This document shows positions 2,898 through 60,100 of a stretch of 64,000 nucleotides of DNA, piece by piece. Each line of letters begins with the position of its first letter. The stretch's first letter is position 1. The translations under genes were made by a program, and so were the position numbers. This stretch comes from Bugula neritina. Lineage: Eukaryota; Animalia; Bryozoa. The DNA lies in NCBI GenBank assembly GCA_964035545.1, contig OZ037773.1, positions 6,849,751-6,913,750 on the forward strand, written 5' to 3'. A model generated the notes under the pieces. It was not told where the DNA came from and ran no database searches. It worked only from the letters and a program-made list of their open reading frames with translations.

Positions 2898-5065
2898 GCA
2901 TTGAGTTAGAGAATAAAGAGAAAGTTGTGCACTTTGCCATGACCAAAGTATCCAAAACCGGATCCTCTACTCTGTTTTCTATATTTGCCAGATTTGTTAT
3001 AAATAATGAGTTAAATATTCTTTCACCAGTACCTCCATCATCAGCCATTAACTGGTGGAAAAACCAAAACATATCTGCAGGTATGTATACGAATATACTT
3101 TGTGAGAGGTTTTAGTTGTTTCTAGTTGATAACTTTACTCATCATGAAACCAAACACTCAACATCTGCTTGCAATATATATTTTTAGTAATTTTCATTAA
3201 AAAAGCTAAAGATGATTAGACAAATATATACCAATACATTACATAACTTTGTAGAAAGCTCATCTGCATTTAGCATTTTGCTGTGTAAGTTTTAGGACTG
3301 CTGTACCTTTAAATATTTCCTCTGAAAGAAAGCGTTTACTTTTTAAAACAAATTTGATATGACATTTTAAAGGTGTTTTCTGGTGATTGACAATGCATGT
3401 GTGACAGCTTATATAATATGTTGATATGCCAGCTTTGTGTCAATTATATATACATACATATTATAACCAGCAGACACCTTTAAATGTTTTGACTAATTTA
3501 TTAAATGAACTGTCATGATTGGTTCAAAACAGACCAACCAGGTTAGAAGTTATAACACTTTTATATGAATATTAGTCAATTTATTATAGATTGTTTCATT
3601 GGACCTAGACATGTAGATAAAGCTGATGTTTTGATACACCATGCAAAGTACAGCAAAGATATGTATGATAAGTATTTGGTGAAGGACTATAAGTGGATAA
3701 TTCCAGTGAGAGAGCCGGTGGCATGGTTCAAATCTGCTGTCAGATATAACTACAGATTCCCCAACTACAAGGTGAAAACTGGTTTTACAAGTTTTACAGT
3801 TTTACAATATTCATTACCAGACTAAAAGCAAACTATCAACTGAAAGCAAATTACTAACTGAAAGCAAATTATCAAACTGAAAGCAAATTACTAACTGAAA
3901 GCAAATTACTAACTGAAAGCAAATTACTAACTGAAAGCAAATTATCAAACTGAAAGCAAATTACTAACTGAAAGCAAGTTACTAACTGAAAGCAAATTAC
4001 AAACTGAAAGCAAGTTACCCAACTGATAAACTGATTGAAATGTTATCAATACAGAGTCCAGAAGAGGTTTTGTCAGATAATGCGTTGCTGTACCAGAAAA
4101 CCAGAGGGAGAGTTGGTGAGGCAGCAAAGTTTCATCTGAGGCAGCTGGAATGGCTGGGCTTTGACTACAAGTTACATGACAACATAACTGCTATTAGAGA
4201 GTATATTGCCAAAATAGTTGAAAGGCTTGTACATATTATTATGTAATTACTAAATATGATGTTTAGCACACCATTAGCATCTATAAATGTATTAGCTAAA
4301 AACATTTAGCGTACTGTTAGCAGCTTCTAAACAAAACAAGTAAAAACAATTACTTCAAGCTTCATAAAATAGTTTAACATTTTAATTTAGTAATTAATTT
4401 GCAGCCTCGTGTATATCAAAAGCTATGTTACGCAAACCTATAAATATATTACTCTGATTACTAAATAATGACAAGCTTGCCCTCTTTTTAGAGTGGACAT
4501 CATTATTCTAAATGATCACTTTGATGCATCTCTTCTGCTACTGAGAAAGAAGTTCCGCTGGAAATATACAGACATCTTTTACAAAAGTTTTACCGTTACA
4601 AACTCTTCCCAAGAACTTATGTCACAAAGCGCAATTACCAAACTTCTTTCTATCAACTTGGGAGAACAACTGCTGTACGAAGCTATGAATAAGAGCTGGT
4701 GGAATCAACCTGGAGTAGAGAAGACTAAATTTTGGAATGAGGTTTGCAACTCTTTTGATGTAACTATTCTTTTTAATTTATTTCTCTTATTTTAAAAGCT
4801 GATAAATGTGTCAGCATGGAGCACTTATTGCGGACATCAAAGATTTATAGACTTGAAGCATATGTTTTAGGTTTCCTATTTTAAGTGGCTGAATAGACGA
4901 GTGAATGAAGACGTATGCCCACCTGTACTGAGTTCTAATTCTGAATATCAGATAGAGGCTACAGAGTATCACAATGACCTCTTTGTCTCTGTGAAGCTAT
5001 GCACAGCCTTAAATATGAAAATGAGTAGAGTTAAAAACGTTCTCATGGACTATGCACTTGGATGA
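2898..5065 (+). CDS. Galactose-3-O-sulfotransferase (GAL3ST/cerebroside sulfotransferase)-like protein, catalytic exons ~2898-3080, 3590-3771, 4055-4224, 4492-4741, 4871-5065; 5' exons uncertain (candidates 1391-1626, 1905-2013, 2477-2523)
   Basis: Exons join in phase. 5'-PSB motif FAMTKVSKTGSST (family consensus roughly FLKTHKTASST), LIHH, 3'-PB motif PVREPVAWFKSAVRY, DIIILNDHFDASLLLLRKKFRW (cf. DLVLIxEyFDESLILL) and NLGEQLLYEAMNKSWW; stop TGA at 5063-5065. Confidence 0.85.
3826..4030 (+). repeat. Intronic minisatellite, 18-19 bp unit (AACTGAAAGCAAATTACT), about 11 copies
   Basis: Visible tandem array directly upstream of the acceptor at 4054; explains spurious ORF 3945-4127. Confidence 0.95.
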
Positions 5066-6695
5066 TGGCTGCTCAACCCGAGTGCAATAATGGAAAATTT
5101 TCAACACTCTTAATAAATTTTTTCTTGAAAGTTTTGTAAAACGTTATAAGTTTTTAGTAATTATACTTGTCGTTAATAACACAGGTTTTTCCTACTTTTC
5201 TTATTGTACTGCACCTATAGGTGAGCTAATAGGACCTACTGTTGTTTAAATAGTGACTAATTATTAGTAAATAACTTTTAAGTCATTCCAACAATAACAG
5301 CTAAAAACTAAAACCAGTGTGCATGATCTAATTTTAAAAAGTTGATTTTTCGTACATTTTGTGCATGCATATCTTTAACACATAAGTTTCAGCAACTTGA
5401 TTGTGAAGTTGTAGTCTTGGGGAAGGAAATTATCGTAAGCTATGATTAACAATATGGTTGACCTCAACTGGTCAGTGTATAAGTCTGAACTTTGAATAAA
5501 GAGGTAAAGCCTGTGGCATAAAATGGAAGTTCTCAGTGTTATATTTACAATAGGATTATTCACCATGATTTTCAAAATAATAGACTTAGATACAAGATTT
5601 GTCATAGGGATGGTAATAATGATCATTGTTGCATAATAAATTTGAAATTAATGCAGACATCTTATGCTTGCAATTGGTTATATAGTAACATATTCAACTC
5701 TCACCTATCGGCTGTAGCCAACAGTGTGGCTAGTAACTAGAATCAATCATATATTATGTTAGATTAGTGTTTTACTACTTTTTCAGCAGAGGTATAAATG
5801 CAACTTTATGCCAAGCTCATATCGAAGTAGTTCTATTGTGAGTTATCACAAATCTTCATTATTAAGCGTGTGTACAAAATCAATTACAAAACAAAATTAC
5901 ATGGGCCCTCAACTTTGCAGCTGTATTTTATTGGTAATTAAAATATAATATAACATACATAACATAACATATAACATAACAGGTTGCAATGGAAGTTAAA
6001 TAAGAATTTACATTCAACATTTTAGTAAAGAAAAATGCAATAGGTCTACTATACATTGTATTATGTTTATTATATAGCTGCCCCTGGGAATTACTTTTAG
6101 AGATTAGTTAAGCTGTGAGTAGGAAATAATGGTTGACATTTTATTGTACAATAGAATGCTCAGGCTGAATAACATTAATTACTAAAACTTAAAGCAGTTG
6201 CAATTATATGAAGTATAAATAATGAATAACGAAAAGTAGTTCAAGATAGGAGTTGTGTTTGCATGTCAAAAATGCGAAGACCTACTAATGAACAAACTAG
6301 TGTACAATAATAAGACAATCCAACTATTTAGAATTAAATTATAGTCAATCTAAATTGCGTTATATGTACCTCATGTCCATTACAACAGTGAAGTATGTTT
6401 TCATAAATAAACTTGATTAATAATTCAATGAAAACACATTTAATTACTATTACTATTAGCTGTATAAATGCAGCTATATAATACACATACAAGATATTGG
6501 TTTAGCATAAATACTATAAATAGGTGTCACAATTTATACGTAATATCCTGTGAAATTTAGACTTCAGCTATTTAATAAAAGTAATAGCATTCTAATGAGT
6601 CAAAGTTGAATAAATTTGAATTGTTTAATGCTGTTTAATATTTTTCTAAATTTAGAAGCTGCCATATAGCTATTCAGGTAACTACTTTCATGTCA

Positions 6696-7333
6696 TCAAC
6701 ATACTATTTGTGGTACTTTTCTGCATCTATCTGTGCCACCAGGTTTTCCATGCGTACTGCCTTTCTTAACTGTCGAATCGTAGCAGATAATTCGAATCTT
6801 TTTAGAACAACTTCTTTTGTGCAACTTTCTCGGCTTATTTCTTACAATTTTCATGTTCCAAAATGGCTCGGCGACTGGTAAACTTTGATTTGATTTGGAC
6901 TTGAGTAAATCTTTTAGAAGAACATCATTAAAATTCTAAAATTTAAGTCTTCAAGGTTAGAAAAACTCTAGTGATTTGACAAGAATGCAACTCCAAGGCT
7001 CTTACAAGCATACTAGCTGCTTTGACATTTTCAATAACAATTCTCTCATTCAGTTAAATTGCTTTTCATCGTTTCAACTTTCAGCTAAAGTATTTACAAA
7101 GTTCTCAGTTTAGAGGCTTATCATAAAGTACTTACCATTGCCTTAGTGACTGTACTTACACTGTTGTTTGAATCAATTGAACTGTTATTGTGTAGCAGAA
7201 CAGAGCTTTTGTAGTGCTGCATAGAAGAGTAAGTCATTGAAATCGTCATAAATATTAGCAGAACAAAATTCATTAGATTAACACAATAAAGATACAGCCT
7301 AGTTACTTTCCAGCTACTCACTAGCTTATCCAT
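6696..7333 (-). CDS. Two-exon secreted prepropeptide (145 aa): exon 1 7333-7136, exon 2 6935-6696; predicted 38-aa, 4-Cys cationic mature peptide
   Basis: Exon 1 has a hydrophobic N-terminal segment (LMNFVLLIFMTISMTYS) and ends ATG|GTAAGT in phase 0. Acceptor TTTTAG| at 6936; exon 2 is open for 79 codons: NFNDVLLKDLLKSKSNQSLPVAEPFWNMKIVRNKPRKLHKR-SCSKKIRIICYDSTVKKGSTHGKPGGTDRCRKVPQIVC, followed by TGA TGA. Confidence 0.7.
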
Positions 7334-7761
7334 TTGAGTATTTACAGCAACCCTTCGAAAGCAACTATATACTTAGTTAAACAGGAAATGGTACTTCAAA
7401 TAACAAATAATTTTCCATTGCAGCGTTCATTGTCTTTCCTTCATATACCATTTGTTAACCTCTTTGAACCGATATTTAATGATATCTCAATATATTGTTA
7501 GATTATGTAGTGCATTAAGTTCTAGAATAATTTTCCTATATTTTATACAATATATATCCAGCTAAGAATCACAATGACAGTAATATCAAAATAATATCCC
7601 ACTGCTATTCTACAGCTGCAAAGGTTAAAAGCTGGGCCACCGCGTCTAACATTATAGTGTTAGACCATAGAGGATGTTCATGAATATATATTCCACTAAA
7701 TTTTTATTATTTTTATATATACTTCCCTCAGCGGTTTCAGGCTTCATCATGTGCTAAATTC

Positions 7762-7824
7762 AGCTTCATATATTTTCTGTAATATAAAATACTATAAGTT
7801 ATATTACAGAAATTATGTGAAGCT
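7762..7824. repeat. Inverted repeat: 26-bp arms, 11-nt loop
   Basis: AGCTTCATATATTTTCTGTAATATAA ... TTATATTACAGAAATTATGTGAAGCT, with two mismatches (one can pair as G-U). Confidence 0.9.
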
Positions 7825-9834
7825 ATAACTAGTCAAGTCATTTAATTACTAACAAATTTTCTTTTTATGATATCTTTGTTTTTAGAACATGAAATATTAG
7901 TTTATTTTTACTGTAATGATTGTAATAGTAGATATTTCGTTTATCTATTTGGAATAATGTTTATATATTATATCTGACACGTGGCATTGTAATATTTAAG
8001 CTTTCAAATAGTTAGATTTAATAAATACCTAAGCTCCTTTAGGGGCCGGTGTAAACTTTTTCATAACCAGCTATTTTAAGATGCAATGTCAAATACATAT
8101 ATAATATGTGTTATAGTGTAAGCATTTACTAAATGTTGTAATGTAATTTAAGCATTTAATTAAATGCAAAAACCGCAAAAGATGGACAAAAATTGTTGAA
8201 ATTATACAGAAATAAATCAGTTGGTCTGTAAAAAATGTTGATGACGATTCAAGACATCAACACCACAACATTTGAACAATAAAAATGCTTTAAACTGCCT
8301 AGTTACATAATTATATTATATTATCATTATTGTATCGTATTTGTAAAATATCTGCCCCCACTAGAAACTAAACCCGCAGTCTTGCAACTAGCAAACTAGA
8401 GTGCTACCTATTACATGCATTATAGGAGCTACTGGGGCATGCTATCACCACAATATTGTATATTATGATTATATTATAACTATAAAATAACATGATATGT
8501 TTATATTATAATAATATATATGATGCAAATAATTTTAAATACACATTTTTAACTCCGAGTATTCTTGTTGTTGTATTTTGTTTGTGTTGTATTTGGAGTT
8601 ATCTTGTCGCAATTTGCTACTGGGTTCATTGTGTTGGTTTGCTAATATTATGCTATGCATTAATAAAGATAAACTTACAACATAAAGAATTGCCAGTTAT
8701 TTGCCACAACTTATACAGTCATCTACATCCGAACTAAATTCTCTCTGCTTAAAGCCTGATTATTTCAAATATAAGCTACTTTGATATTAGCAGCCAATAG
8801 ACGCCTAGTATTTGTCTAACAAAATGGACAGCCTTAATTTGAAGAGGCTTGATTTTACAAAACTGGTGCTGAAAAGTAAAGTTATAACTCGCATGCATTC
8901 TTTAGCATAGGTTTTAGACAAGAAAATAAATGACTTATATATTTTAAAAATATTTTTATTAGCTTTACGGGGCATGGACATAGAAAGTGAATTTCAATGA
9001 GCTCTATAAAATCCATAAAACTCAGTCATTTGTGCATTTTTAAAAAAACTAATGAAACTCAATCGCATAATATGTCAGGCAACAATTGATAACATAGTTT
9101 AAAAGTTTTGATCTATGCAGTTAACGTATAGCATTAAAATAAATTAAAAATAATAACAGTAATATAATGTATATATCCTTTCTATATATAATAACTCTGA
9201 CAATTCTAAGTAAACCTCCGCATACTAAGTGAATGGTGACGTCACTCATATGATATAAAGCTAAAGTGTTTAAATTACATAATGTACATACAAAAGAAGT
9301 AAGTATAGTGTCTATGGCACACTTATGAAAATTTTAAACGTACGTTTGATAGCAATAAATTGCTTACCTGTAATGATGATGTCAATATTATTTATAAAAA
9401 ATTTCTGATGCCTACTTCACCTTTATTTTATTTTCAAAACTTTCTCGTGGTGGAAAGACAACTCCATATACATGAGTAAAAGGAAAGAATACAATCCACT
9501 AGGAAGTAACTTTTCTATTTAAACATATAAATTTTAACTTTCTTAAAAGTTAATAAGAGAAGTGGAGACACACAACGCATGCCCCTGGTGCACAACGTGT
9601 GATTAGATTTGCCTTCCTTTTCACATGAACAGATTTTAACTTCTATGGCTACAGACAGAGCATGTATGAAAATTACTAATACAAATTAAATCGCCCAAGA
9701 ATGAGATTTACAGCAGCTATAGTGGTTTGGTTTCAACTTCATAACAAAACCAAAGTTTGTTTCACTTATAAACTGAGTTATACTGCAGTTTAATACCATT
9801 TTTAGATTTCATCAGCATGCGAGAATTAGAGGTA

Positions 9835-9982
9835 GGTGCAGTAATGGAGAATTGAGAAAAGCCTGTGTTCTAGATTAGAACTGTAGCATAAAAAGTGATG
9901 TTCTTGAAAAAATGTCAACCAAAATTTAATAAGATAATTAAAGAGCTTAGGCTATCTCAATTTCTCCACCACTACTGCTCCT
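9835..9982 (+). mobile_element. Short dispersed MITE-like repeat with core GAGAAAAGCCTGTGTTCTAGA; related copies at ~10830-10990 (+), ~11210-11355 (-), ~37025-37110 (+), ~39350-39450 (+)
   Basis: Shared core seen at all listed positions. This copy has imperfect terminal inverted repeats (GCAGTAATGGAGAATTGAGA ... TCTCAATTTCTCCACCACTACTGC). Confidence 0.6.
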
Positions 9983-12900
9983 GAAAAGAGAACTTGCAAG
10001 TAGACTATAGGCTCGCTTAGATGAAGTAGTTTGAGATAATATAATGATTATATGCTGAGTGCTATGCTATAACCATAGAAGTATAAGTTTACAACCATAT
10101 TGGAGGCTAGCAAAACTAGACAAATCACAAGAGTTTCACCTTGGCTTTATGCATAGTAGTCCTAGAAATCATGCATGTCACTATAAATTTTTATATATTC
10201 ATATTATTTTATAATAGCTGATGCTAGCTTATGTGCATTCACTAACTGCATGGGTTTAGAGCGTGATAACAGGGCAGTAGACAGTGGACTAACAATTAGG
10301 GCGTTCGTATGTTGCTCTAATACCATTGAATATATAAGTGTGAATGTAAATACTATTATGTAACACGGCTAGCCATAAACTGTTAAGCAGCTATTAATAG
10401 CTATTGTAGCTTTGTCACAATCTGCTGCACAACCTGCTAGTAGTCTGAAGAATTTTCAGAAACATTTATTATGCAGTTTATGCCTTATTGTGTGCAAATA
10501 TATGTCTGGGTTTACAATTAAATATAAAGTTTGAGCAGTGTACTATGAGTCATTCTATAAAAAAACTCCGAGTTGGGGTGAAAGAGTGCAGTAGTTTGGG
10601 ATTTTCAAGTTTGGGGTGTAAATTGGAACCACATGTAAATAAAATGACAACTAAATATATGCAACAATAATTGCTTCAGTTCTAAAAATAGAAACCTTGC
10701 AAAAGTAGAAGCTAGTCATGAGTGTATTACGGTCACTGATGCGTGAAGATGGTAGCTTTTCTTGAGTAGAAAAACCTTTTTTTAGTCTTAGAATTGAGAT
10801 TTTCATTATGTGAATGGGTTTCGGTGAAGTTAGATGCAGCAGTATTGAAAAAATTGAGGAAAGCCGTGTTCTAGAAGAAAAGTGTAGGGTAGGAACTCTT
10901 GTTCTTGCTAGAAATTAGTATGAAATGTTTTTAAAGAAATGAAAGAACTTGGGCTATTGAAATTTTTTCAGTTTCTCACCTATTTCCGCTTTGCCCTGTT
11001 CGGGTAGCGGAATTGAAATTTATTTAGTATTGCATCTGAATGAATTATTTCATCACTTCTGTCATGATTATATGTGCGTGTGTTGTAAGTTGAACCTCAC
11101 ATTACTTTTATATGCAACTAATATGAAAATATGGTTATCAATATATCAACAACTTATTTGCAGTTTTTGCTTTAATAAAGCATTATCTAAGCATAGTGTT
11201 TTACTGTAACAACTGAGAAACTTAACAGACTAAATTCTTTAACTTTTTAAAAATTTTGTGGGGGCGTCATAGTTGGGATTTCCAAAATAACATAGCTACT
11301 TTTTCTAAAAAATTTACCTAGAACACAGGCTTTCTCCATCTCTGCAATTGCTTACAATGTAATTAAGAGTGGAAATGTATAATATCTTCACTTAGCTTAT
11401 GTTATGGTTTAACATTTGGATTTAAAGATTGATTTAATTTGCAGGCCACCAACTCTCTGCTAATATATACTAGTATGAGTTAGCACTGTTCATAACACTT
11501 GCAGCTATCTTAGATGGTCAGCATGTGTGCATGATTCAGTAATGTTATGTAATATACATGTTATCTTAGTATATTGATCTCACTTCATGGCTGCATAAGT
11601 ATTTGTTATTGGTAAGACAGTTAGATAAGAATGCCAGCATCTCAGAGTTATAATTATATAGTGATACCACTATTGCTAGGCAGTGTGCATAGTAGTAGAC
11701 TATAAAGTGCTATATAGTTATTGAGATCAAATAAATAGAATCTGATAATGTTTATGTTTGAGGTTTGAGATAATGTTTATTCACATAGACTCAACAACTA
11801 AAAGACAACAAAATTATATAAAAATTCATTGTGGAAATACATATAAATTATCAAACAAGTAGACTTGGCTATCAAGATAAAAAATAAAGTATATATTCTT
11901 GCAGAGTGCTGTGACATCAAATGAAATGTACCATGACACATTAAGAGCATCAGATTATGGTTATAAGTAGGTTATTATAGTTACTCCTTAAAGCAATAAA
12001 AGTTACTAAAACTCCTATACTAACAAATCTCTATCAGTAAACTTATAATATACATACCTAATGCAGCCACTACCGCAGCTCATCTTGCTTAGCCTACACT
12101 TTAAGTTATCAAAATCTAGCAAATACTAATACTTATAGAAGTACATTGTTTACACACTTCAGATAGTTTATGTAGCAGGTGGCCAACCTATTGCTGTTGT
12201 TTAATGAACAGCCCAATGACTGTGTTTACTAAGAAGCTAATATAAAGGCTGTAAATGTCAAGGTATTTGTTGTTAAGTATGAAATATTATATAATAACTG
12301 AATAATGTATCGCCAGCAGAATCTTCATTGTCTTTTCCTTGCATTTTGAAGAGAAGGTGACTGCTGTATGCATGGTGCTGCATGTTACTCGTAAATAGGG
12401 GTAAGGGACATCCATCTGCAAATAATATAAAGCAATGAATGCTAAAGTAGCATAGTCTTTTAATGCTGTAAAACTGAACCAAGAAAGTTGTACTTTTTAA
12501 CCAAATTACACACAAGCTTATTTTTTATTACATGTCATATTAGCAAGACATTATTTAACAAAAGCCTTTATTAATTTTTATTTCTGCCTTGGCTTGTATA
12601 AATGCATTTGCTTAAGTCATAAAGCGGTTTTGTATATAATATTCTAGTATATCTTCATGACAACACAATTCAAAACTTTAGTTAAAAATGTTGACCCTGG
12701 AATACTTAGAGCAAGAAAAAGAGGAAAACGAGCAGGGGGTTCGTGGGAAACATCAAGTTAAAAACTCAAGAGTTCCCCTGCCAGCCATCATACTGACCAA
12801 TGCACAATCTGTACGCTATACAAGCTAGATGAACTGCACAGATTAATATTAAATACAGAAGCACTTGGAGCAGAGAGTTTTTTATACGATAGGCAGCACT

Positions 12901-15549
12901 CAAGCTAAATAAACGTGTATAATAATTTTTGTTAATTGAACTTCCAGCCTCAGAGACTTTTTACTCTTATTTTAAGCCATGTATGTTACACTGTTATCAT
13001 TTTTAATATCATGGGCATCGGTATTTAACACCTTTTTTTTCACAACATATATCATGTTAGTGATAGAAATAAAATCAATCAATCAATCAAAATGACTGCA
13101 ATTATAATATTATGAGCGTATCAATGTTTTGAAATGAACGAATTTTTTAATTATTTTTAGTTGATTTTAATTAATCTAGCCAGCAACATTGTTTGCATTT
13201 CAATTTTAAAGCTTACACAATAGTTAAAAAATGAGAAAAAAGCTATTATTGTAACTAAAATAGAATCAACATTGGATTTCTTAATGCCAGAACTTTAAAA
13301 CCTATAAAATAAGGAATTCCAATGTATGAGCATAAAGTTTAAATATTCACCCTTACCAAAAGAATGTCAACACTAAAATCCAATCAAGAGATATTATAGC
13401 AGCTATAACACAATATTATAAAAAGACTCAACAAGATAAGATATGCTGAATTACTAGAAGCCTGAAGAACAAAAAAGTGAGAGCTTGGCTCAGGAAATTT
13501 GAGACTAAAAATATAGCAGTTGCGCCATATTACTAAAATCTCAGAAGGAAAAAAGAAAAAAAATGATCAAAAAGACAAGATTCTTTGTTATCACAATGAC
13601 CACAGAAGAGACTTATAATGTTATAATGTAAATGAATAGGTTATGGAGACAACAGCTGTGTTGTAAATGAGTAATAACTGCACATGAGCCTAGATTCAAG
13701 TGACCCTATAATAGTGCAGGGTTGGGGGTGGTAAATGTGGACTGCAGATTTTTTTCTCGTCTTCAAGAGGTTTCTGCAAGATTTAGGCTTGTTTTTGTGT
13801 CCTTGAAGAGGAACATATAGTTTTAGCCGACAATTTGATTAATAACTGTCTGGCTTTATTGTAAGGGACACTCCGGGAGTGGGTGGTGGACAGCCATTAC
13901 AAAAAATACATTCATTTTTTTCTGCTGTCCTATTATAGAAATCCATAAAATTTGAAAAGTTTTTGCTCCATTGAAGAGTCTGGTTAAAAATGAGAAATAT
14001 GATAGAAAGTAGAGCCTTGATTTTTGTTGAGTTATGTGTCGTTTGTTTTTGTAAAAAACTTTCTAATTATGACGCATCACATCTTTCTCTACGAAAATGG
14101 TACGGTACCCATAGCCGAGAAACTCGTTGTGCTGTCTATTAGTGTAATAAACAGTACAGGGGTTGATTTAGGTTTGATTAAAATGAACATTTGTTACCAC
14201 CACTTTACAACGTGACTCATCACTAATTTAGCTCACAAGTCATACTATGTTACTATGTTATTGGCTGCTAATGCTTTAACTTAAAATCATTTAAACTCTC
14301 TCCTAATATATATAAAGTCTGCTGCATGCCACATCTCAAAAATGAGTTTTTGTGTAAAGAATTCGAGGCTGAGGCTTTCAGATAACCTCTAATTCAAGTG
14401 ACCTCTACGCAAACAACGCTTTAGAAAGTAGATACGATTTCTCCTGCAGTGAACTAAATTCAATATTAAAAAGTCTGAACAAAATAATCAAGAACCAATA
14501 AATTCTTTTAGTATGTGTTTTTTAAAGGTGTTGATTACTAATACTTGAAGACTCATTGTACCAGCTTATAAATAAATATTTAATTCTAATAAGAAATTTT
14601 GAAACAATTATAAGTTACTATAAGGCATATTGCATGGGATCATTAACTTTATTTGCAATTTACATTCTTATTATTATATTATTATTATATTATAATACTC
14701 TTCAATATACTTTTTAAATTATAAAATTTCTTATGTGTTGAACTAAATCAGTTCAAAATAAAGTATAAGTCTCAAACAACTCCAACACACAGCACTTTTC
14801 GCATAAACTGGTGTTGTCTTCTTTTTTTTTAATGATTAATAAAACTTTTTTAAATACAGTTTTAAAAATCAGCAGTAAAAATAATAATATTGTTTATGAA
14901 AAAATGGCATGCAATTCATGCACTCCACCCCATTTTATTTCTTTAGAATCATTGCCCTATTATGAAATGTGCTATGTTAGCAGACACATCTTGCAAGCAA
15001 ATCAGTTTAACTAGTTAGTATATAAATATTTGTGAGCTGCACATCATGCTTTGTTCTATATGAGTTGCCCTAACTATGGTAGGTCAAGTGCTAGAGCCAT
15101 GACTAATTAATGGAGCCACTATGTAAAACTATGTAGAGCCAATCAGGTAATTAATTATACAATATTGCGTTATTCTAAATAATATCCTTTGCATTGTAAT
15201 AGACTGTGAAATCTTAATTGTTTTCAAGCAACTTTGTGACTTATACATTTTACCAACATACTGTTTGATTCATTATATATTTTACATTGCCCTCTATGGC
15301 ATCAGTAGAGACCTACGGCTCTAATAAAGTACCAATAAAATCAAACATATACGACTGCGCTTATACCAATACAATAATAATTTATAAATTCATTAATAAA
15401 AATGTTTGTGCTTTGCTAGGAATAATATAAGTCTTTATACCTTACAAAAATGAACAAAAAAGTCCAAAAAATTGTTGAATAATCTTATAAAATTGCCATT
15501 TTTATGCAATTTACGCAAATTTACTTAATTAATTTACCACTATAATTTA

Positions 15550-33899: not shown

Positions 33900-35003
33900 T
33901 TAAAAAGCGAAGTTGACCTTGTTGTGTCGACAGGTGAGAAGTCTGCAATATGTTCTTCTAAAAGCCCTGTTCATTCCTGCGTAAATGAAGACATTGAGGC
34001 ATGAGTTGGTGACGGCGACAGCAAAAAATATATGGTAGACTGACGCAGGAAGTTTACTGTGGTAGTCAATGGTAAAAACTGTCACTATGGGCAGCCAGCA
34101 ACAAAGAAACACCACAAACACTGTACACAGGTTTGTGACAATTCTACGGGAAGCTCGGTTTCTCTTAGCAGTATGAATATGGACGGTAGAGCTGGAATTG
34201 TTGTTACTTGGTCCTGAGCTTGATAGTTCATAATCCTCAACCTTAGAGCTATCTTGGGTAACATAGTCTACACCGGTCGAGCTTGATTTTGAGTAATTGT
34301 TACCAGCACTGCATTTGCGAGCAGACATTTTCAGTCTATTCTGAGTTCGTCTGAAGTGGATGATGATACTAATGTAGCAGAAGAGTGTGATTACAGTACA
34401 AGGTCCGACGCACACACCGTGGAGCATGGTTTGGACGTAGATGTAGGTCAGGGAGTCGTGTGATATGAAGATACACGTTCCCATCAGGGAGTTGTAGCCA
34501 AACTGCCCAAATCCAAGTAAAGCTGGTAGCACTAGCATCACAGGCATGGTCCATAGAACCACCACACTCAGCGCCACGTTTTTCCGACTGTAAAGTCTCG
34601 TGTATAGCTCACTTCCTCTGACCAACAGGATGTAGCGATTTACTGCAATGGCGGCTAAGCCGAACATAGTTTTACCTAATAGCCCGATGTTCAGTGCACC
34701 TATGAATGTGCATACCTGGGTAGGTATAGTGTTATGATCTACGGTGAGGAGGTAGGCTGAGAACGGCGCTATCACGGCGCACACGACAAAGTCTGCTGCA
34801 GCTAAGTTACCTATGTACACATTTGGGATAGACTTGAGCTTTTTGTTTATGAGTATAGAGATAATAGTCAGACTGTTACCAATGACTCCGACCACGGATA
34901 TGATGCAGTATAGCGCCATAGCAATGGTTGGTATGGTGGTATTAACAGCTTCTTCTGCCTCTTCATAATCTCTAGGTTGGAAGTGAAAATCTGTTTGATT
35001 CAT
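33900..35003 (-). CDS. Class A (rhodopsin-like) GPCR, melatonin-receptor/Moody/Tre1-like, 367 aa, intronless CDS
   Basis: Seven hydrophobic segments; GN (TM1), NLAAAD (TM2), AVNRY (TM3), W (TM4), CCWLP (TM6), NSCLNVFIY (TM7), helix 8 FRRTY; N-glycosylation site at MNQT. True ATG at 35003 follows an acceptor TTTTCTTGTAG| at 35017, so the ORF-track extension to 35063 is intronic. Confidence 0.93.
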   Translation of the reverse strand: MNQTDFHFQPRDYEEAEEAVNTTIPTIAMALYCIISVVGVIGNSLTIISILINKKLKSIPNVYIGNLAAADFVVCAVIAPFSAYLLTVDHNTIPTQVCTFIGALNIGLLGKTMFGLAAIAVNRYILLVRGSELYTRLYSRKNVALSVVVLWTMPVMLVLPALLGFGQFGYNSLMGTCIFISHDSLTYIYVQTMLHGVCVGPCTVITLFCYISIIIHFRRTQNRLKMSARKCSAGNNYSKSSSTGVDYVTQDSSKVEDYELSSSGPSNNNSSSTVHIHTAKRNRASRRIVTNLCTVFVVFLCCWLPIVTVFTIDYHSKLPASVYHIFFAVAVTNSCLNVFIYAGMNRAFRRTYCRLLTCRHNKVNFAF

Positions 35004-36431
35004 TTTCAACTTTTGGCTACAAGAAAAAAAATAGTACACTATTTTTTCAGTGTAAACCCACAAACAAATTAATAGTTATTATTGCTTAAAAATAGTAAAA
35101 GCATTATTAAAAAAACTTTGAAATTTACTGAAAACCTCAGATTTTCTTATCTATTGATAATCATGGCGTGTCAACTTTTAGAGTGCTGTTAATACAGAAA
35201 CCTTTGGTATAAGATATGGTAATATTATTATATATTCACTCAGCACATTTAGCAATCAAAAGTATGAAATTTAAAGCAGGCATAAGCCTATATTATGGAC
35301 AGGATATGGGAATTAGCCACTATAGTAGTCTAGTGTAAAAGATAATCCTACTAATTAAAAAGTTACCCATGCTTGCGATAACAAATGAATAATGTTATTG
35401 TAGACTAAATCATTTTACAGTTAATTTTTCTGTTACAGAATTAACTAGCTAGCCACAATTTATAACAATATAAGACATTAATTATTAGCCCCTGTAATCA
35501 TATTTTTAGCCACACAACTACTGATACATGCAAATAAAATCCTATTTAGTGGTCACATTCAAAGTGACCCCAGAATTAATTTAATATAACATCTACCACA
35601 GACACTTCGTAGCAACAATGCAGTAATAATATAACTTCAAGTACTTGGTATTTAAATGTTAATTATCTTAACAGCAAATTCATAATAGAATAAAGTATAT
35701 TTCCTTTGTTTAATTTGCTCTGCAGTTTAATTTTGTAGACACACGGATTAAAGTACTAAACCATAACAAACTGTCACATCTCCGCACATACTTGAACTTT
35801 AAATATTATAAATGATTATAATTCTTTTATATTAAGAAAGCTGATTTTCAGGTGTAAATGAATTAGCTAAAGTGTTTATATAGTAGGAAAAATAATTAGG
35901 ACGATTTTTCGTCATGCATCTTTATGCATTCAGTTATTAAAATTACATTGTGTTCTTTTAAAATATCACGGATAGCAGCTTTTTTACAAGTTTAACTAGA
36001 CTTTGATATACTTAAATGTTGACAAACAGTATTAAATATGTAGCAATAATCAACTTGAGTATTTCTCCTAATTAAAAACTGTTATGAATAATTAGTTGCC
36101 TTGGCAACAGATGTTTATACAGAAACAATGAGTTGAAGCCGAGGCTCTGCTGGTGCCCTCCTCTATTTTGACTGCGCTCTTTATACAGAAACAGCACTAG
36201 GTTGAAGTTGATCAGATAATTAGCTGTTAATAGAATAATTAAAAGCTACCAGTATTACAAATTGTTAATTCAGTATAAAATATACAATAATAAGTTGGAT
36301 TAAAGCATAAGTAGATATATTCATAGCAGTGTCGGATGATTCACTGGGCCAAGTAGGAAGTTATCTTCTTTTAATGAGACACAAAACAAAGGCAATGTAA
36401 TGCACTTGAGTTGAGATTAAAGACTAAAGCA

Positions 36432-57100: not shown

Positions 57101-60100
57101 GGTAGGTTTATAAACACCATGAGTGAGATATCACATCTCTAAGTGAATGTCAGTAAATAAGTTGAAATAAAAAACATCTGTCCAGAAATAAAAGAAATAC
57201 AGTTTAGAATAACAAGTGGCTTTTCCTCCGGACACTTTTTATTATTGGAAAGTTTGAGTTTAACAAACATACACCTACATCACACAGTACACCTACCTTT
57301 TACAATTTACTTGCTTTTTACAATGTACTTACTTCTTACAACATACTTACTTTTTACAATATACTAACTTCTTACACTTACCTATTAAAACACACTTACT
57401 TCTCACAGTACACTTACTTCCCACAGTACACTCACCTCTAACAATATACTTACATCTCACAATACACTCACCTCGCACAGCCCCCTGTGACCGAACTTCT
57501 CCATAAACAGCTGATATGCCTCCCTGACGTCTGCTGGAGTCTCTTTTGAATTAAGGAAACTGTCACCCGACTCTATAGAAACTTCTAGAAAGTGTGCAGC
57601 AAACTCCGGGTGACCGTGTATCAGGCTGGACAACTCCTGGATACATGGTATAATATATTACATATATGGTATAATACTATATATATACATATATGGTATA
57701 CTACACTAGATATATGATCCAATATACCACATATATGGTATACTACACTAGATATATGATCCAATATACCACATATATGGTATACTACACTAGATATATG
57801 ATCCAATATACCACATATATGGTATACTACACTAGATATATGATCCAATATACCACATATATGGTATACTACACTAGATATATGATCCAATATACCACAT
57901 ATATGGTATACTACACTAGATATATGATCCAATATACCACATATATGGTATACTACACTAGATATATGATCCAATATACCACATATATGGTATACTACAC
58001 TAGATATATGATCCAATATACCACATATATGGTATACTACACTAGATATATGATCCAATATACCACATATATGGTAAATTACTATATAATATATCCCATA
58101 TTATATTAGATATATACAACATATAACCCGGTTGAAATTATCTGTTTACAAACATGAAGTAAAAAATCTATTTGCTAAGATGTGAATGATAACTTGATAT
58201 ACAGACCCACCTCTAACTTATTAGGTACTCCTGCACTGAAGACCTCATTTATGTGGCAGGCCAGTAAGGATGCTAAGTCTGTGTAATGTTTGGCTTCCCA
58301 CACTACAAAACAGCAAGGAATTGAAAGCAACTGTCTATAGTGAGAATACCAGACGAGGAACTTGAATGGTCAACCAGAAGCGACTCTCAGATGTTCTTCG
58401 CTTCTTTTCAGCAGTTCAACTATTTATAACAATCTTATAACTGAACGCAAAGTAAAAACTCGAAATGAGAATGAAGAAAGGATGTAGAAGAAATTACCGT
58501 GTTTTCCTTTAGTAAGGATTCCCATCAGCACCTGAGAGTAAACTGGAGAAATTCCGGTAGCAGGCATGTAGTCCTTAACAACCTGCAGCAGAAAATGTAG
58601 CCTTAGAGAAACAAATTTGATAACACAAAAGGGGAGCCTTGCAGAAGTTTACGTGCAACTTTAACAATGCCTTTTCTAACAGTTTTGTTTGCCTACACTT
58701 AATATAAAATCATTTCTAATGTGTAAAACTATTACTTTAGTTGTTTTGTCAGGCCTTAAGCTTGTGAATAATGAAAAAAAATGTTGGCTGGCAAAAAAAG
58801 ACATTTAGACAAATAATGTTGACTAATTATATATTAGTATACAATATTATTATTGCGGCAAACGATGAATGCACAGCGTTCAGCTACATCCTTAAAAAGA
58901 GTAACACAAACCTGGCTTGAAATATCAACAGTATGATTTACATATTCCAGCATTTCAGCACAGGATGTAGTTGAAGGAACTGTTAACTTGTCCAGTGCTT
59001 TCTCATGAACAAGGCATTTCTCTCTTTTCCCCAAAATCATCTATTAAACAGAACTACGTATTTCAAAAGCTTCGCTGTTACATGTAGCACAGAAATCAAC
59101 CACTGCATAGGATACATAAACTCAACACGCTTTAGTTTTTGAAACAAAAATTCACTTCAACAAAAAACATAGATGTTGGCAACTATTTTGTGAATAGAAC
59201 ATAATTGACTGACACTGAAGAATCGCAATGAGCAGTAGAGTCGGGTTAGAAGGGGCCGAGCAGGGTGATAGGCTCGAATCACTTCATCTGTCATGGAGTC
59301 AATCACGTGACCAGCCAACGCCAGTTCCATCATACGTCGGTCGGCCAGTGAGCTTCTATACTTGTTTGATAACTCATACGCCTAGGGACACAAGCAGGCG
59401 GTCCGTACTTATCAAGTGCAGAGATAGGTACACAGGCTAGATTCAAATGGGCGAGTAGCAATTATTCTGCTAGACACAGTCTGTTACAATCTAGCACTCA
59501 CTGACCTTGGAGACAAGGTTATTAGTATATCACTATTAAAAATAAGATAATCTCAATCGAGATAATACCACATTATCATGTTAATTCCACTTGGAGCGCT
59601 TAAAATTTTTAATGAATATAAAAAACACACACACTCTAGGTCCCAGTTATCAATGTGATATCAATATTTCACAAGAGAGTGGAAGCTGACGTACGTGGAC
59701 ATTCAAGAAGGCGTGATTACAGTAGACTTTGTGTAGTCTGAACAGGTTGGGCACCACGTTGAGTCCATTGGCAACTGACCAGTTCTAAAAATAGCACACC
59801 TTTCCAGAAACCATCCACTAGCAGAGCTAAGCAGACAGGTTTGCTTTAACCTATTTGACATGTAATTGAGAGACAACTCAAACATGGAATAGCTCAATTA
59901 AATCATTGAATATAATTTATCACAAATCTAATGGAATAATAAATCATTTTTGGAAATATTTAAAAGCAAACAGCTGAGAACATTTTCTATAAGAATTTTG
60001 ACTAATAAATCGGGCGTTTTCAGGCATATTAGTTTGACTAGCTTGTCAATTCAAACAAGTAATTTCCGACAAACTTGACACTCTGAGAAAATATTTCGTA

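What the first reader, a model, noticed from the sequence alone, without database searches (positions are those of the whole stretch)
6696..7333. Hidden two-exon gene for a candidate new disulfide-stapled cationic beta-hairpin peptide
Seen: the ORF track shows only exon 1. Splicing 7136 to 6935 gives a 145-aa precursor with a hydrophobic leader, a Ser/Asn-rich pro-region, a basic site ...PRKLHKR, and then SCSKKIRIICYDSTVKKGSTHGKPGGTDRCRKVPQIVC-stop. The mature 38-mer has Cys at 2, 10, 30 and 38 (mirror-symmetric C-x7-C ... C-x7-C), 9 K/R against 2 D (about +7), beta-branched residues in both Cys-bounded arms and a Gly-rich loop. Established: nested C1-C4/C2-C3 cationic hairpins typify tachyplesin, protegrin, gomesin and alvinellacin, and KR is a prohormone-convertase site. 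Inference: a new antimicrobial/defence peptide or neuropeptide with an unusually long 19-aa loop and no BRICHOS or cathelin pro-domain. I do not recognise it as a named family.
Basis: partly seen in the sequence, partly recalled or inferred. Interest (0 to 1): 0.85.

Follow-up and report, generated by a model that had tools for sequence, protein, structure and literature searches.

The report
Mini member of a Cys-clasped family
The two short reading frames probably form a real small gene of the bryozoan Bugula neritina. It is the smallest member of an unnamed neighbouring family of secreted proteins closed by two cysteine-bearing arms, but nobody has yet shown that it is transcribed or what it does.

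Summary
The sequence facts hold: minus-strand exons 7333..7136 and 6935..6696 join into 145 aa ending in a +7, four-Cys 38-mer. Openness alone is at chance level, with 84 open frames of 70 aa or more in the window.

**For a real gene**
- A sister genome of the B. neritina complex (14.5% substitutions) keeps both exons open and unshifted, with all four Cys and the KR site.
- Only 4 of 34 comparable frames stay open there.
- A profile built only from the C-termini of the four neighbouring cluster genes finds this locus as its best non-training hit genome-wide (E 0.011).
- The locus keeps the family's two C-x7-C arms but has 19 residues in place of the Pro/Gly repeats.
- AlphaFold2 pairs the arms as strands.

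**Corrections**
- The conserved donor is 7160|7159, giving 137 aa.
- The conserved Met is at 7273.

**Against**
- No RNA data were reachable.
- Substitutions look neutral, at 14% and spread evenly over codon positions.
- A duplicated sister copy carries a stop codon.

It is not a member of the tachyplesin, protegrin or alvinellacin families, and antimicrobial function is untested.

The scan noted a similar four-Cys cationic tail before, on a WAP-domain gene of this genome (s1-441774).

Real gene: about 0.6-0.7. Interest is moderate.

The parts
7541..7547 (-). TATAAAA motif inside the most conserved upstream block (7606-7487, 6.8% substitutions). It is a possible core promoter; several ATGs lie between it and the ORF.
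   Evidence: Alignment and block statistics. The promoter role is inferred.
7160..7333 (-). Exon 1 (58 codons to the conserved donor): hydrophobic leader and a Ser/Asn-rich stretch. The ATG at 7333 is specific to the window genome; the sister copies have in-frame ATGs 10 codons upstream or 2 codons downstream.
   Evidence: There are no indels in 174 nt against the sister genome.
7271..7273 (-). ATG conserved in all four aligned copies. It would start MNFVLLIFMTISMTYSS..., a short signal-peptide-like N-terminus, and is an alternative true start.
   Evidence: Alignment. The signal peptide was not tested with a predictor.
7154..7159 (-). Donor GTAAGT after ...AAC AGT (phase 0). It is conserved in the window, L008 and both L007 copies, and the AUGUSTUS model EB796_015433 uses it. 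It gives a 137-aa precursor.
7130..7135 (-). It is intact in the window and in L007 copy 1 but reads ATAAGT in L008 and L007 copy 2. If used, it adds VSTVTKAM, giving 145 aa.
6936..7159 (-). Intron (224 nt, or 200 nt from the second donor). A CTAAC branch-point-like motif lies at 6956-6960 and a TTTTAG acceptor ends at 6936; both are conserved. Against the sister genome it carries three indels, none a multiple of three (1, 7 and 4 nt).
6813..6935 (-). Exon 2, pro-region (41 codons), ending in PRKLHKR. The K-R codons at 6813-6818 are identical in all copies.
6840..6845 (-). Internal GTAAGA that the AUGUSTUS model of the sister genome uses as a donor, which would make the Cys peptide intronic. 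The exon it joins to is not conserved in the window: it has stop codons and its AG is lost.
6699..6812 (-). Putative mature 38-mer. Arm 1 is C-SKKIRII-C (6783-6809), the loop is 19 residues with GKPGG, and arm 2 is C-RKVPQIV-C (6699-6725).
   Evidence: AlphaFold2 places strands at both arms.
6696..6698 (-). Stop codon directly after the last Cys, as in the family members A1, A2, B1, B2 and L059.
6571..6639 (-). 3' flank with three ATTAAA motifs (6634-6639, 6624-6629, 6571-6576). The last two are conserved in the sister genome. The block 6659-6580 is 89% identical. These are putative poly(A) signals.
   Evidence: The poly(A) role is inferred.

Best explanation
The locus is most likely a real two-exon gene of Bugula neritina. 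It is the smallest, inverted member of a lineage-specific, unnamed family of secreted proteins, whose other members lie 8-25 kb away in a tandem cluster and at three more loci.

Family members share two features:
- a basic stretch followed by a C-x7-C arm rich in V/I;
- a C-terminus of the form PGG-x(1-3)-C-x2-[VI]P[DQ]I[IV]C-stop.

Between the arms they carry 14 to about 150 residues, often Pro/Gly repeats, plus two further Cys. The candidate keeps only the two arms, separated by 19 residues.

Proposed mechanism (inferred, not shown):
1. The hydrophobic N-terminus takes the precursor into the secretory pathway.
2. A proprotein convertase cuts after Lys-Arg.
3. In the released 38-mer the two arms pair as antiparallel strands fixed by two disulfides (C2-C38 and C10-C30), closing a flexible Gly/Pro loop.

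What this cationic 'clasp-only' peptide does is unknown. It could act in defence, in signalling, or by interfering with or capping the larger matrix-like relatives.
For: **Homology**
- A profile built from the C-termini of the four cluster genes alone ranks the candidate as the best non-training hit in the 216-Mb genome (E 0.011).
- BLASTP against B1 gives 9/15 identities at the extreme C-terminus, ending at the stop in both. Against B2 it gives 8/15.
- Arm 1 and the preceding basic stretch align with L059, L058 and B2.

**Retention in the sister genome**
- Both exons stay open and unshifted in the sister genome. Only 4 of 34 frames of 50 codons or more do so in about 9 kb of aligned sequence, and the others include a known Gal3ST exon.
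- The exons lie in the third and fourth longest gap-free runs, after the two Gal3ST exons.
- The intron and the flanks carry indels that are not multiples of three.
- The four Cys, the KR site, the upstream donor, the branch-like motif and the acceptor are all conserved.

**Rival gene model**
- The AUGUSTUS exon that would splice out the peptide is not conserved.

**Structure prediction**
- AlphaFold2 with 2 and with 6 sequences gives strands at both arms (pLDDT 82-86) and a disordered loop.
Against: - No RNA evidence exists here. The only run found is genomic DNA at about 133x.
- No transcript-derived protein is in the large protein collections.
- A junction pattern scan gave only chance hits.
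- Exon substitution rates (14.4%, 16.1%, 12.5%) equal the intron (13.6%) and the background (14.5%).
- Differences are spread evenly over codon positions, [21, 18, 20]. The Gal3ST control gives [14, 8, 28].
- dN/dS does not single out the proposed frame.
- The start codon is not conserved in position.
- The duplicated sister copy has a TGA inside the peptide.
- Two of the six family Cys and the repeat region are missing.
- Exon 1 shows no similarity to other members.
- The codon-usage score is only at the 70th-85th percentile of random open frames.
Confidence: 0.6

Rival explanations
1. It is a decaying relic of a family member. An old inverted copy lost its repeat region and two Cys, is no longer under selection, and happens still to be open in two lineages.
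For: - The substitution rate is neutral and differences are spread evenly over codon positions.
- The duplicate copy in the sister genome has a nonsense codon.
- The ATG position is not conserved.
- No transcript was found.
- Counting all three copies, one stop was observed against about 2.5-3.4 expected under neutrality. That estimate comes from the per-substitution stop rates and the divergences, and it is not a significant deficit.
Against: - The copy is so diverged from its paralogues that only about 15-20 residues align. Yet it keeps an intact 137-145-codon frame, canonical splice signals, both arms and a stop right after the last Cys.
- There are no frameshifting indels in 411 nt across three copies, while the background has one indel per 69 nt, 65% of them not a multiple of three. 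The expected number is about 5.
- Only 4 of 34 control frames stay open.
Confidence: 0.22
2. The gene is real but follows the structure of the sister-genome annotation (EB796_015433). Exon 2 would end at ...AAAATT|GTAAGA (6846|6845), so the Cys-rich part is intronic or untranslated.
For: The AUGUSTUS model P0002, built with transcriptome hints, uses this donor in both tandem copies.
Against: - The exon it joins to has stop codons and a lost acceptor AG in the window genome.
- The model fuses two tandem copies through an unlikely exon extension.
- The region called intronic is the best conserved part of the locus (92-95% identity over 6896-6777).
- That region is homologous to coding C-termini of family members that have no intron there.
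Confidence: 0.05
3. It is a chance pair of open frames in non-coding DNA of an AT-rich genome, unrelated to any gene.
For: The window holds 84 open frames of 70 aa or more. AT-rich frames are naturally rich in K, N, I and F, which gives apparent 'leaders' and positive charge. Coding statistics are weak.
Against: A genome-wide profile hit at E 0.011, 8 kb from the cluster used to build the profile, ends at the stop codon. The frame is retained in the sister genome. The Cys, KR and splice signals are conserved.
Confidence: 0.03
4. It is a real gene whose product is a beta-hairpin antimicrobial peptide in the functional sense.
For: - The mature part has a net charge of +7 in the window genome and +5 in the sister.
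- AlphaFold2 predicts a two-stranded sheet.
- A similar four-Cys cationic tail ends a WAP-domain gene. WAP proteins are often antimicrobial or antiprotease; that is general knowledge, not tested here.
Against: - There are no activity data.
- Other family members with the same arms are neutral or acidic in this module and carry collagen-like or Pro-rich repeats, which points to matrix roles.
- The 19-residue disordered loop is unlike known hairpin antimicrobial peptides.
- Positive charge is expected from AT-rich codons.
Confidence: 0.15

Closest known systems
Neighbouring unnamed 'Cys-framed Pro/Gly-repeat' gene cluster of the same genome (four genes at G000:C9:6,832-6,849 kb; earlier notes s1-442874 and s1-443020), with related loci at C9:7,652,101 and C4:22,508,446 / 22,512,304
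   Same: - The C-terminal module PGG-x(1-3)-C-x2-[VI]P[DQ]I[IV]C is followed by a stop.
- An upstream C-x7-C arm is preceded by a basic stretch.
- Both have dibasic processing sites, a short first exon ending in a phase-0 GTAAG donor, low GC3, and the same chromosomal neighbourhood.
   Different: - The candidate has 4 Cys instead of 6.
- It has no Pro/Gly or collagen-like repeats, with 19 residues between the arms instead of 14-150 plus a further Cys.
- It has KR rather than the R-x-K/R-R furin motif, and the site lies before arm 1 rather than after it.
- It is on the opposite strand.
- Exon 1 is not detectably similar.
- It is strongly cationic.
Beta-hairpin antimicrobial peptides (tachyplesin/polyphemusin, protegrin, gomesin, arenicin/alvinellacin); comparison from general knowledge
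   Same: It is cationic, with two Cys pairs placed mirror-symmetrically on two predicted antiparallel strands. The C1-C4 / C2-C3 ladder is plausible.
   Different: - The candidate has 38 residues, against about 17-25.
- Its loop is 19 residues and predicted disordered, against a tight turn.
- Cys spacing within an arm is x7, against x1-x4.
- It has no cathelin or BRICHOS domain (Pfam negative).
- It has no C-terminal amidation signal.
- It has no sequence match to any solved chain and no fold match.
C-terminal exon of a WAP-domain gene in the same genome
   Same: - The frame is C-x7-C ... KPxG ... C-x7-C next to the stop.
- It is very basic.
- 8/19 residues are identical over the second half (pairwise E 6e-5).
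   Different: - The loop has 12 residues.
- The module is attached to a multi-domain WAP protein.
- It was not found by the family profile A5, so homology is only suggestive.
- Whether that exon is used is unverified.
Hypothetical protein EB796_015433 of the B. neritina draft GCA_010799875.2 (P0002)
   Same: It is the orthologous locus and shares exon 1, the upstream donor and the acceptor.
   Different: It is an AUGUSTUS model that fuses two tandem copies and splices out the Cys peptide. Its last exon is not conserved in the window genome.

Membership tests
Unnamed Cys-framed family of the neighbouring cluster | C-terminal module PGG-x(1-3)-C-x2-[VI]P[DQ]I[IV]C at or within 5 residues of the stop | tested here: met
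   The candidate reads GKPGGTDRCRKVPQIVC-stop. A profile built without the candidate gives E 0.011 genome-wide. BLASTP against B1 gives 9/15.
Unnamed Cys-framed family of the neighbouring cluster | Upstream C-x7-C arm, with a basic start and a V/I-rich end, preceded by a basic stretch | tested here: met
   C-SKKIRII-C aligns with C-RVVVRVV-C, C-RAVYQIL-C and C-REVAYLV-C.
Unnamed Cys-framed family of the neighbouring cluster | Six-Cys frame C1..C2-x7-C3..C4..C5-x7-C6 | tested here: not met
   Only four Cys are present. C1 and one of C3/C4 are absent.
Unnamed Cys-framed family of the neighbouring cluster | Pro/Gly-rich or collagen-like repeat region between the arms (present in the four cluster genes, absent from the short members L058 and L059) | tested here: not met
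   There are 19 residues with a single GKPGG. B1 has a Pfam Collagen hit.
Unnamed Cys-framed family of the neighbouring cluster | Furin-type R-x-K/R-R sites | tested here: inconclusive
   The candidate has RKLHKR, which is dibasic KR with P4 = Leu. The cluster genes have RRKKR, RAKR and RRKR.
Beta-hairpin antimicrobial peptides (tachyplesin, protegrin, gomesin, arenicin/alvinellacin) | Short peptide (about 17-25 aa) with a tight turn between two disulfide-linked strands | tested here: not met
   It has 38 aa and a 19-residue loop predicted disordered (pLDDT below 50).
Beta-hairpin antimicrobial peptides (tachyplesin, protegrin, gomesin, arenicin/alvinellacin) | Family-specific precursor domain (cathelin for protegrin, BRICHOS for arenicin/alvinellacin) | tested here: not met
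   Neither exon has a Pfam hit at the family cut-off.
Beta-hairpin antimicrobial peptides (tachyplesin, protegrin, gomesin, arenicin/alvinellacin) | Nested C1-C4 / C2-C3 disulfides | not testable with these tools
   AlphaFold2 gives two paired strands, but coordinates and disulfide geometry cannot be read out. Chemical disulfide mapping is needed.
Beta-hairpin antimicrobial peptides (tachyplesin, protegrin, gomesin, arenicin/alvinellacin) | Antimicrobial activity | not testable with these tools
   This needs synthesis and MIC assays.
Neuropeptide / peptide-hormone precursor | Signal peptide, dibasic sites, and a mature peptide conserved beyond the genus | tested here: inconclusive
   A hydrophobic leader and a KR site are present. 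An exhaustive HMMER search of 1.84 billion representatives found relatives only in the B. neritina complex. No signal-peptide predictor was available.

The most novel reading that the evidence does not exclude
A bryozoan-specific protein family uses a two-arm disulfide 'clasp' (C-x7-C paired with C-x7-C) to close loops of 12 to about 150 residues. The candidate is the clasp alone, turned into a free cationic peptide with a defence or signalling role. The same mini-module has been joined by exon shuffling to a WAP-domain protein.
Probability: 0.2. Interest if true: 0.65.

Novelty: new variant of a known kind. Interest (0 to 1): 0.42.

Why it matters
Bryozoans have almost no characterised gene-encoded peptides. 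If the gene is expressed, it gives a minimal, chemically tractable 38-residue handle on an undescribed Cys-framed protein family of B. neritina. Its arms could be synthesised and disulfide-mapped to learn how the larger repeat-bearing relatives are closed or cross-linked.

It also shows how a lineage-specific matrix-like protein can shrink to a free cationic peptide, which is one route by which defence or signalling peptides may arise.

Practically, it flags a probable mis-annotation (EB796_015433) and a gene that ORF-based tracks miss.

If it turns out to be a relic, it is an ordinary case of gene-family turnover.

Tried and rejected
**RNA evidence**
- The single run search returned only a DNA run (X1, about 133x, uniform depth). 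Laying it confirmed the assembly but says nothing on expression.
- A scan of metagenome contigs for the spliced junction, allowing either donor, gave 6 hits, all with the wrong spacing, so they are chance matches.

**Protein searches**
- The search with exon 2 and the search with P0002 found only P0001 and P0002.
- The last search, with B1, was swamped by collagen-like repeats.

**Known families and folds**
- Pfam, PDB sequences, ESM Atlas, Foldseek against PDB and Rfam gave nothing for the candidate.

**Evolutionary and coding statistics**
- dN/dS of about 0.45-0.5 looked like constraint, but the five control frames gave the same range, so it is uninformative.
- GC content and codon-usage log-odds do not separate the candidate from real neighbouring exons or from random frames.

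**Other readings rejected**
- An antisense frame on the plus strand (6639-6878, 80 codons) is broken in the sister genome.
- No paralogue of exon 1 was found.
- The literature search found no described Bugula peptide of this kind.

Full report
**1. What is in the sequence**

On the minus strand, 7333..7136 (66 codons) ends in ATG|GTAAGT, and 6935..6696 (79 codons plus TGA) follows TTTTAG. Its last 38 residues are SCSKKIRIICYDSTVKKGSTHGKPGGTDRCRKVPQIVC.

Openness alone means little. The window is about 31% GC and holds 84 stop-to-stop frames of 70 aa or more. Base composition by codon position is unremarkable. A codon-usage log-odds score was trained on 22 intronless GPCR genes of the same genome. 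It puts the two exons at 0.03 and 0.10. Four genuine Gal-3-O-sulfotransferase exons next door score 0.00-0.14, and random open frames have a median of -0.03. That is weakly positive at best.

**2. Source and expression data**

- The genome has 216,009,554 bases in 321 contigs, and the window lies on a contig of 10,879,868 bases.
- This fits the Darwin Tree of Life assembly of Bugula neritina: 216.00 Mb, 320 scaffolds plus the mitochondrion, and chromosome 9 at 10.88 Mb (PMC11480708).
When laid on the locus it proved to be genomic DNA at a uniform depth of about 133x.
- No transcript-derived protein exists in the large protein collections.
- A scan for the spliced junction in metagenome contigs gave only chance hits.
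- The locus is single-copy in its own genome.

**3. Comparison with a sister genome**

An exhaustive HMMER search found two relatives.

- P0001 is a 53-aa ORF on a JGI contig (locus L008).
- P0002 is hypothetical protein EB796_015433 of the draft GCA_010799875.2 (locus L007). That draft was annotated with AUGUSTUS plus transcriptome hints (PMC7576161).

About 10 kb around the locus aligns, with 14.5% substitutions and one indel per 69 nt. This fits a different cryptic species of the complex.

In L007 the locus is tandemly duplicated. The two copies are 11% apart, and each is 15-16% from the window.

The alignment shows the following.

- The acceptor and a CTAAC branch-like motif are conserved.
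- A second GTAAGT donor 24 nt upstream (7160|7159, same phase) is conserved everywhere and is the one AUGUSTUS used. This gives a 137-aa form.
- The ATG at 7333 is not conserved in position, whereas the ATG at 7273 is.
- All four Cys and the KR site are kept, with synonymous TGC/TGT changes at two Cys.
- The only indel inside the frame is an in-frame 3-nt insertion in the loop.
- L007 copy 1 has CGA changed to TGA after SCSKKI.

**4. Is the frame maintained?**

Substitution rates give no sign of constraint.

| Region | Substitutions |
|---|---|
| Exon 1 | 14.4% |
| Intron | 13.6% |
| Pro-region | 16.1% |
| Peptide | 12.5% |
| Background | 14.5% |

Differences are spread evenly over codon positions, at [9,7,10] for exon 1 and [12,11,10] for exon 2. 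The Gal3ST control exons give [8,4,13] and [6,4,15]. The dN/dS value of about 0.5 is matched by the control frames.

The frame itself, however, is kept.

- Of 34 frames of 50 codons or more in the aligned 9 kb, only four stay open and unshifted in L007. They are candidate exon 2, a Gal3ST exon, a frame overlapping another Gal3ST exon, and one unknown frame.
- Exon 1 proper is also retained; its one indel lies in the intron.
- The exons occupy the third and fourth longest gap-free runs, after the Gal3ST exons.
- Simulated neutral substitution leaves exon 1 open 39% of the time and exon 2 open 20% of the time.

Counting the nonsense codon in copy 1, stop avoidance alone is not significant. The lack of frameshifts is the stronger signal: about 5 were expected over the three copies and none was seen.

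**5. Family link**

This changed the reading.

A small profile that included it hit a gene 5.5 kb before the window start. That gene belongs to the cluster noted as s1-442874.

I then built a profile from the C-termini of the four cluster genes only. Its best non-training hit in the whole genome is the candidate (E 0.011). Three further loci follow.

Alignments show a shared frame:

- a basic stretch;
- a C-x7-C arm;
- a variable middle with one more Cys;
- PGG-x(1-3)-C-x2-[VI]P[DQ]I[IV]C-stop.

The candidate keeps both arms and the PGG motif. It lacks the first Cys, the linker with its Cys, and all repeats.

None of these proteins has a Pfam family, apart from a collagen repeat in B1. GC3 is low throughout the family, so the candidate's AT-rich codons are not anomalous.

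This homology also argues against the AUGUSTUS model that splices the peptide out. The exon that model joins to is broken in the window genome.

**6. Structure**

AlphaFold2 was run with 2 sequences and again with 6. Both runs predict strands at the two arms (pLDDT 82-86) and a disordered loop. With only two strands in the model, they must pair with each other. Coordinates could not be inspected, so the disulfide pattern remains inferred. No fold or sequence match to solved structures was found.

**7. Verdict**

The gene model is probably right in outline, with a corrected donor and start.

The locus is best read as the minimal member of an unnamed, lineage-specific, secreted Cys-clasped family. 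My estimates are:

| Reading | Probability |
|---|---|
| Functional gene | 0.6-0.7 |
| Relic of the family | about 0.2 |
| Peptide spliced out, as in the AUGUSTUS model | about 0.05 |
| Chance ORF | below 0.05 |

Antimicrobial or neuropeptide function is untested. Interest is moderate.

Noticed in passing
G000:C9:1923300-1929400 (L045), terminal exon at L045:3014-3115 (-): A gene with at least three WAP four-disulfide-core exons (Pfam E 2e-9 to 5e-6) appears to end in a 33-aa exon, DNCRWITKKRCHPTARKPNGKRKCRRIRKYVCQ-stop. It has the same C-x7-C..KPxG..C-x7-C frame as the candidate.
   Followed up: partly
G000:C4:22508446-22508505 and 22512304-22512363 (L058, L057); G000:C9:7652101-7652133 (L059): These are three further loci with the family's C-terminal module and upstream C-x7-C arm. 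L058 and L059 are short members without Pro/Gly repeats. L057 seems to need a frame change or an intron within the module.
   Followed up: partly
L007:9103-10669 and L007:10688-12400: The sister genome (GCA_010799875.2) carries a tandem duplication of about 1.6 kb of the whole candidate locus. The copies are 11% diverged. Copy 1 has a TGA in the peptide, and its annotation EB796_015433 fuses the two copies.
   Followed up: yes
window 3556-5062 (+): Exons of a galactose-3-O-sulfotransferase gene (PF06990) lie convergent with the candidate and are conserved in the sister genome with third-position-biased substitutions. I used them as the positive control.
   Followed up: yes
window 13387-13566 (-): A 60-codon open frame stays open and in frame in the sister genome, with only in-frame indels of 6 and 3 nt. 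It has no Pfam hit and may be an unannotated exon.
   Followed up: partly
window 7753-7830: An inverted repeat upstream of the candidate aligns to itself in reverse and gives weak, sub-threshold miRNA-like Rfam hits (E 0.14-0.77).
   Followed up: no
window 5776-5972 and 9716-10100: The depth of the DNA run rises from about 133 to 16,000-84,000, with many loose ends. These are high-copy repeats.
   Followed up: no
window 6086-6288: A 202-nt gap-free block about 88% identical to the sister genome has no long open frame. It is a conserved non-coding element or an unrecognised exon between the candidate and Gal3ST.
   Followed up: no
window 33900-35063 (-): An intronless rhodopsin-type GPCR (PF00001, E 7e-37). 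The genome holds at least 77 such matches.
   Followed up: partly
window 57621-58109: A tandem repeat leaves long open frames on both strands (unit about 14 aa, DHISSVVYHICGIL). It is likely a satellite, not a gene.
   Followed up: no
G000:C9:6847211-6847440 (L051, gene B2): Where B1 has TGT followed by the donor AAC|GTAAGA at the end of its second exon, B2 has an in-frame TGA and no GT. B2 may be spliced differently or be damaged.
   Followed up: no
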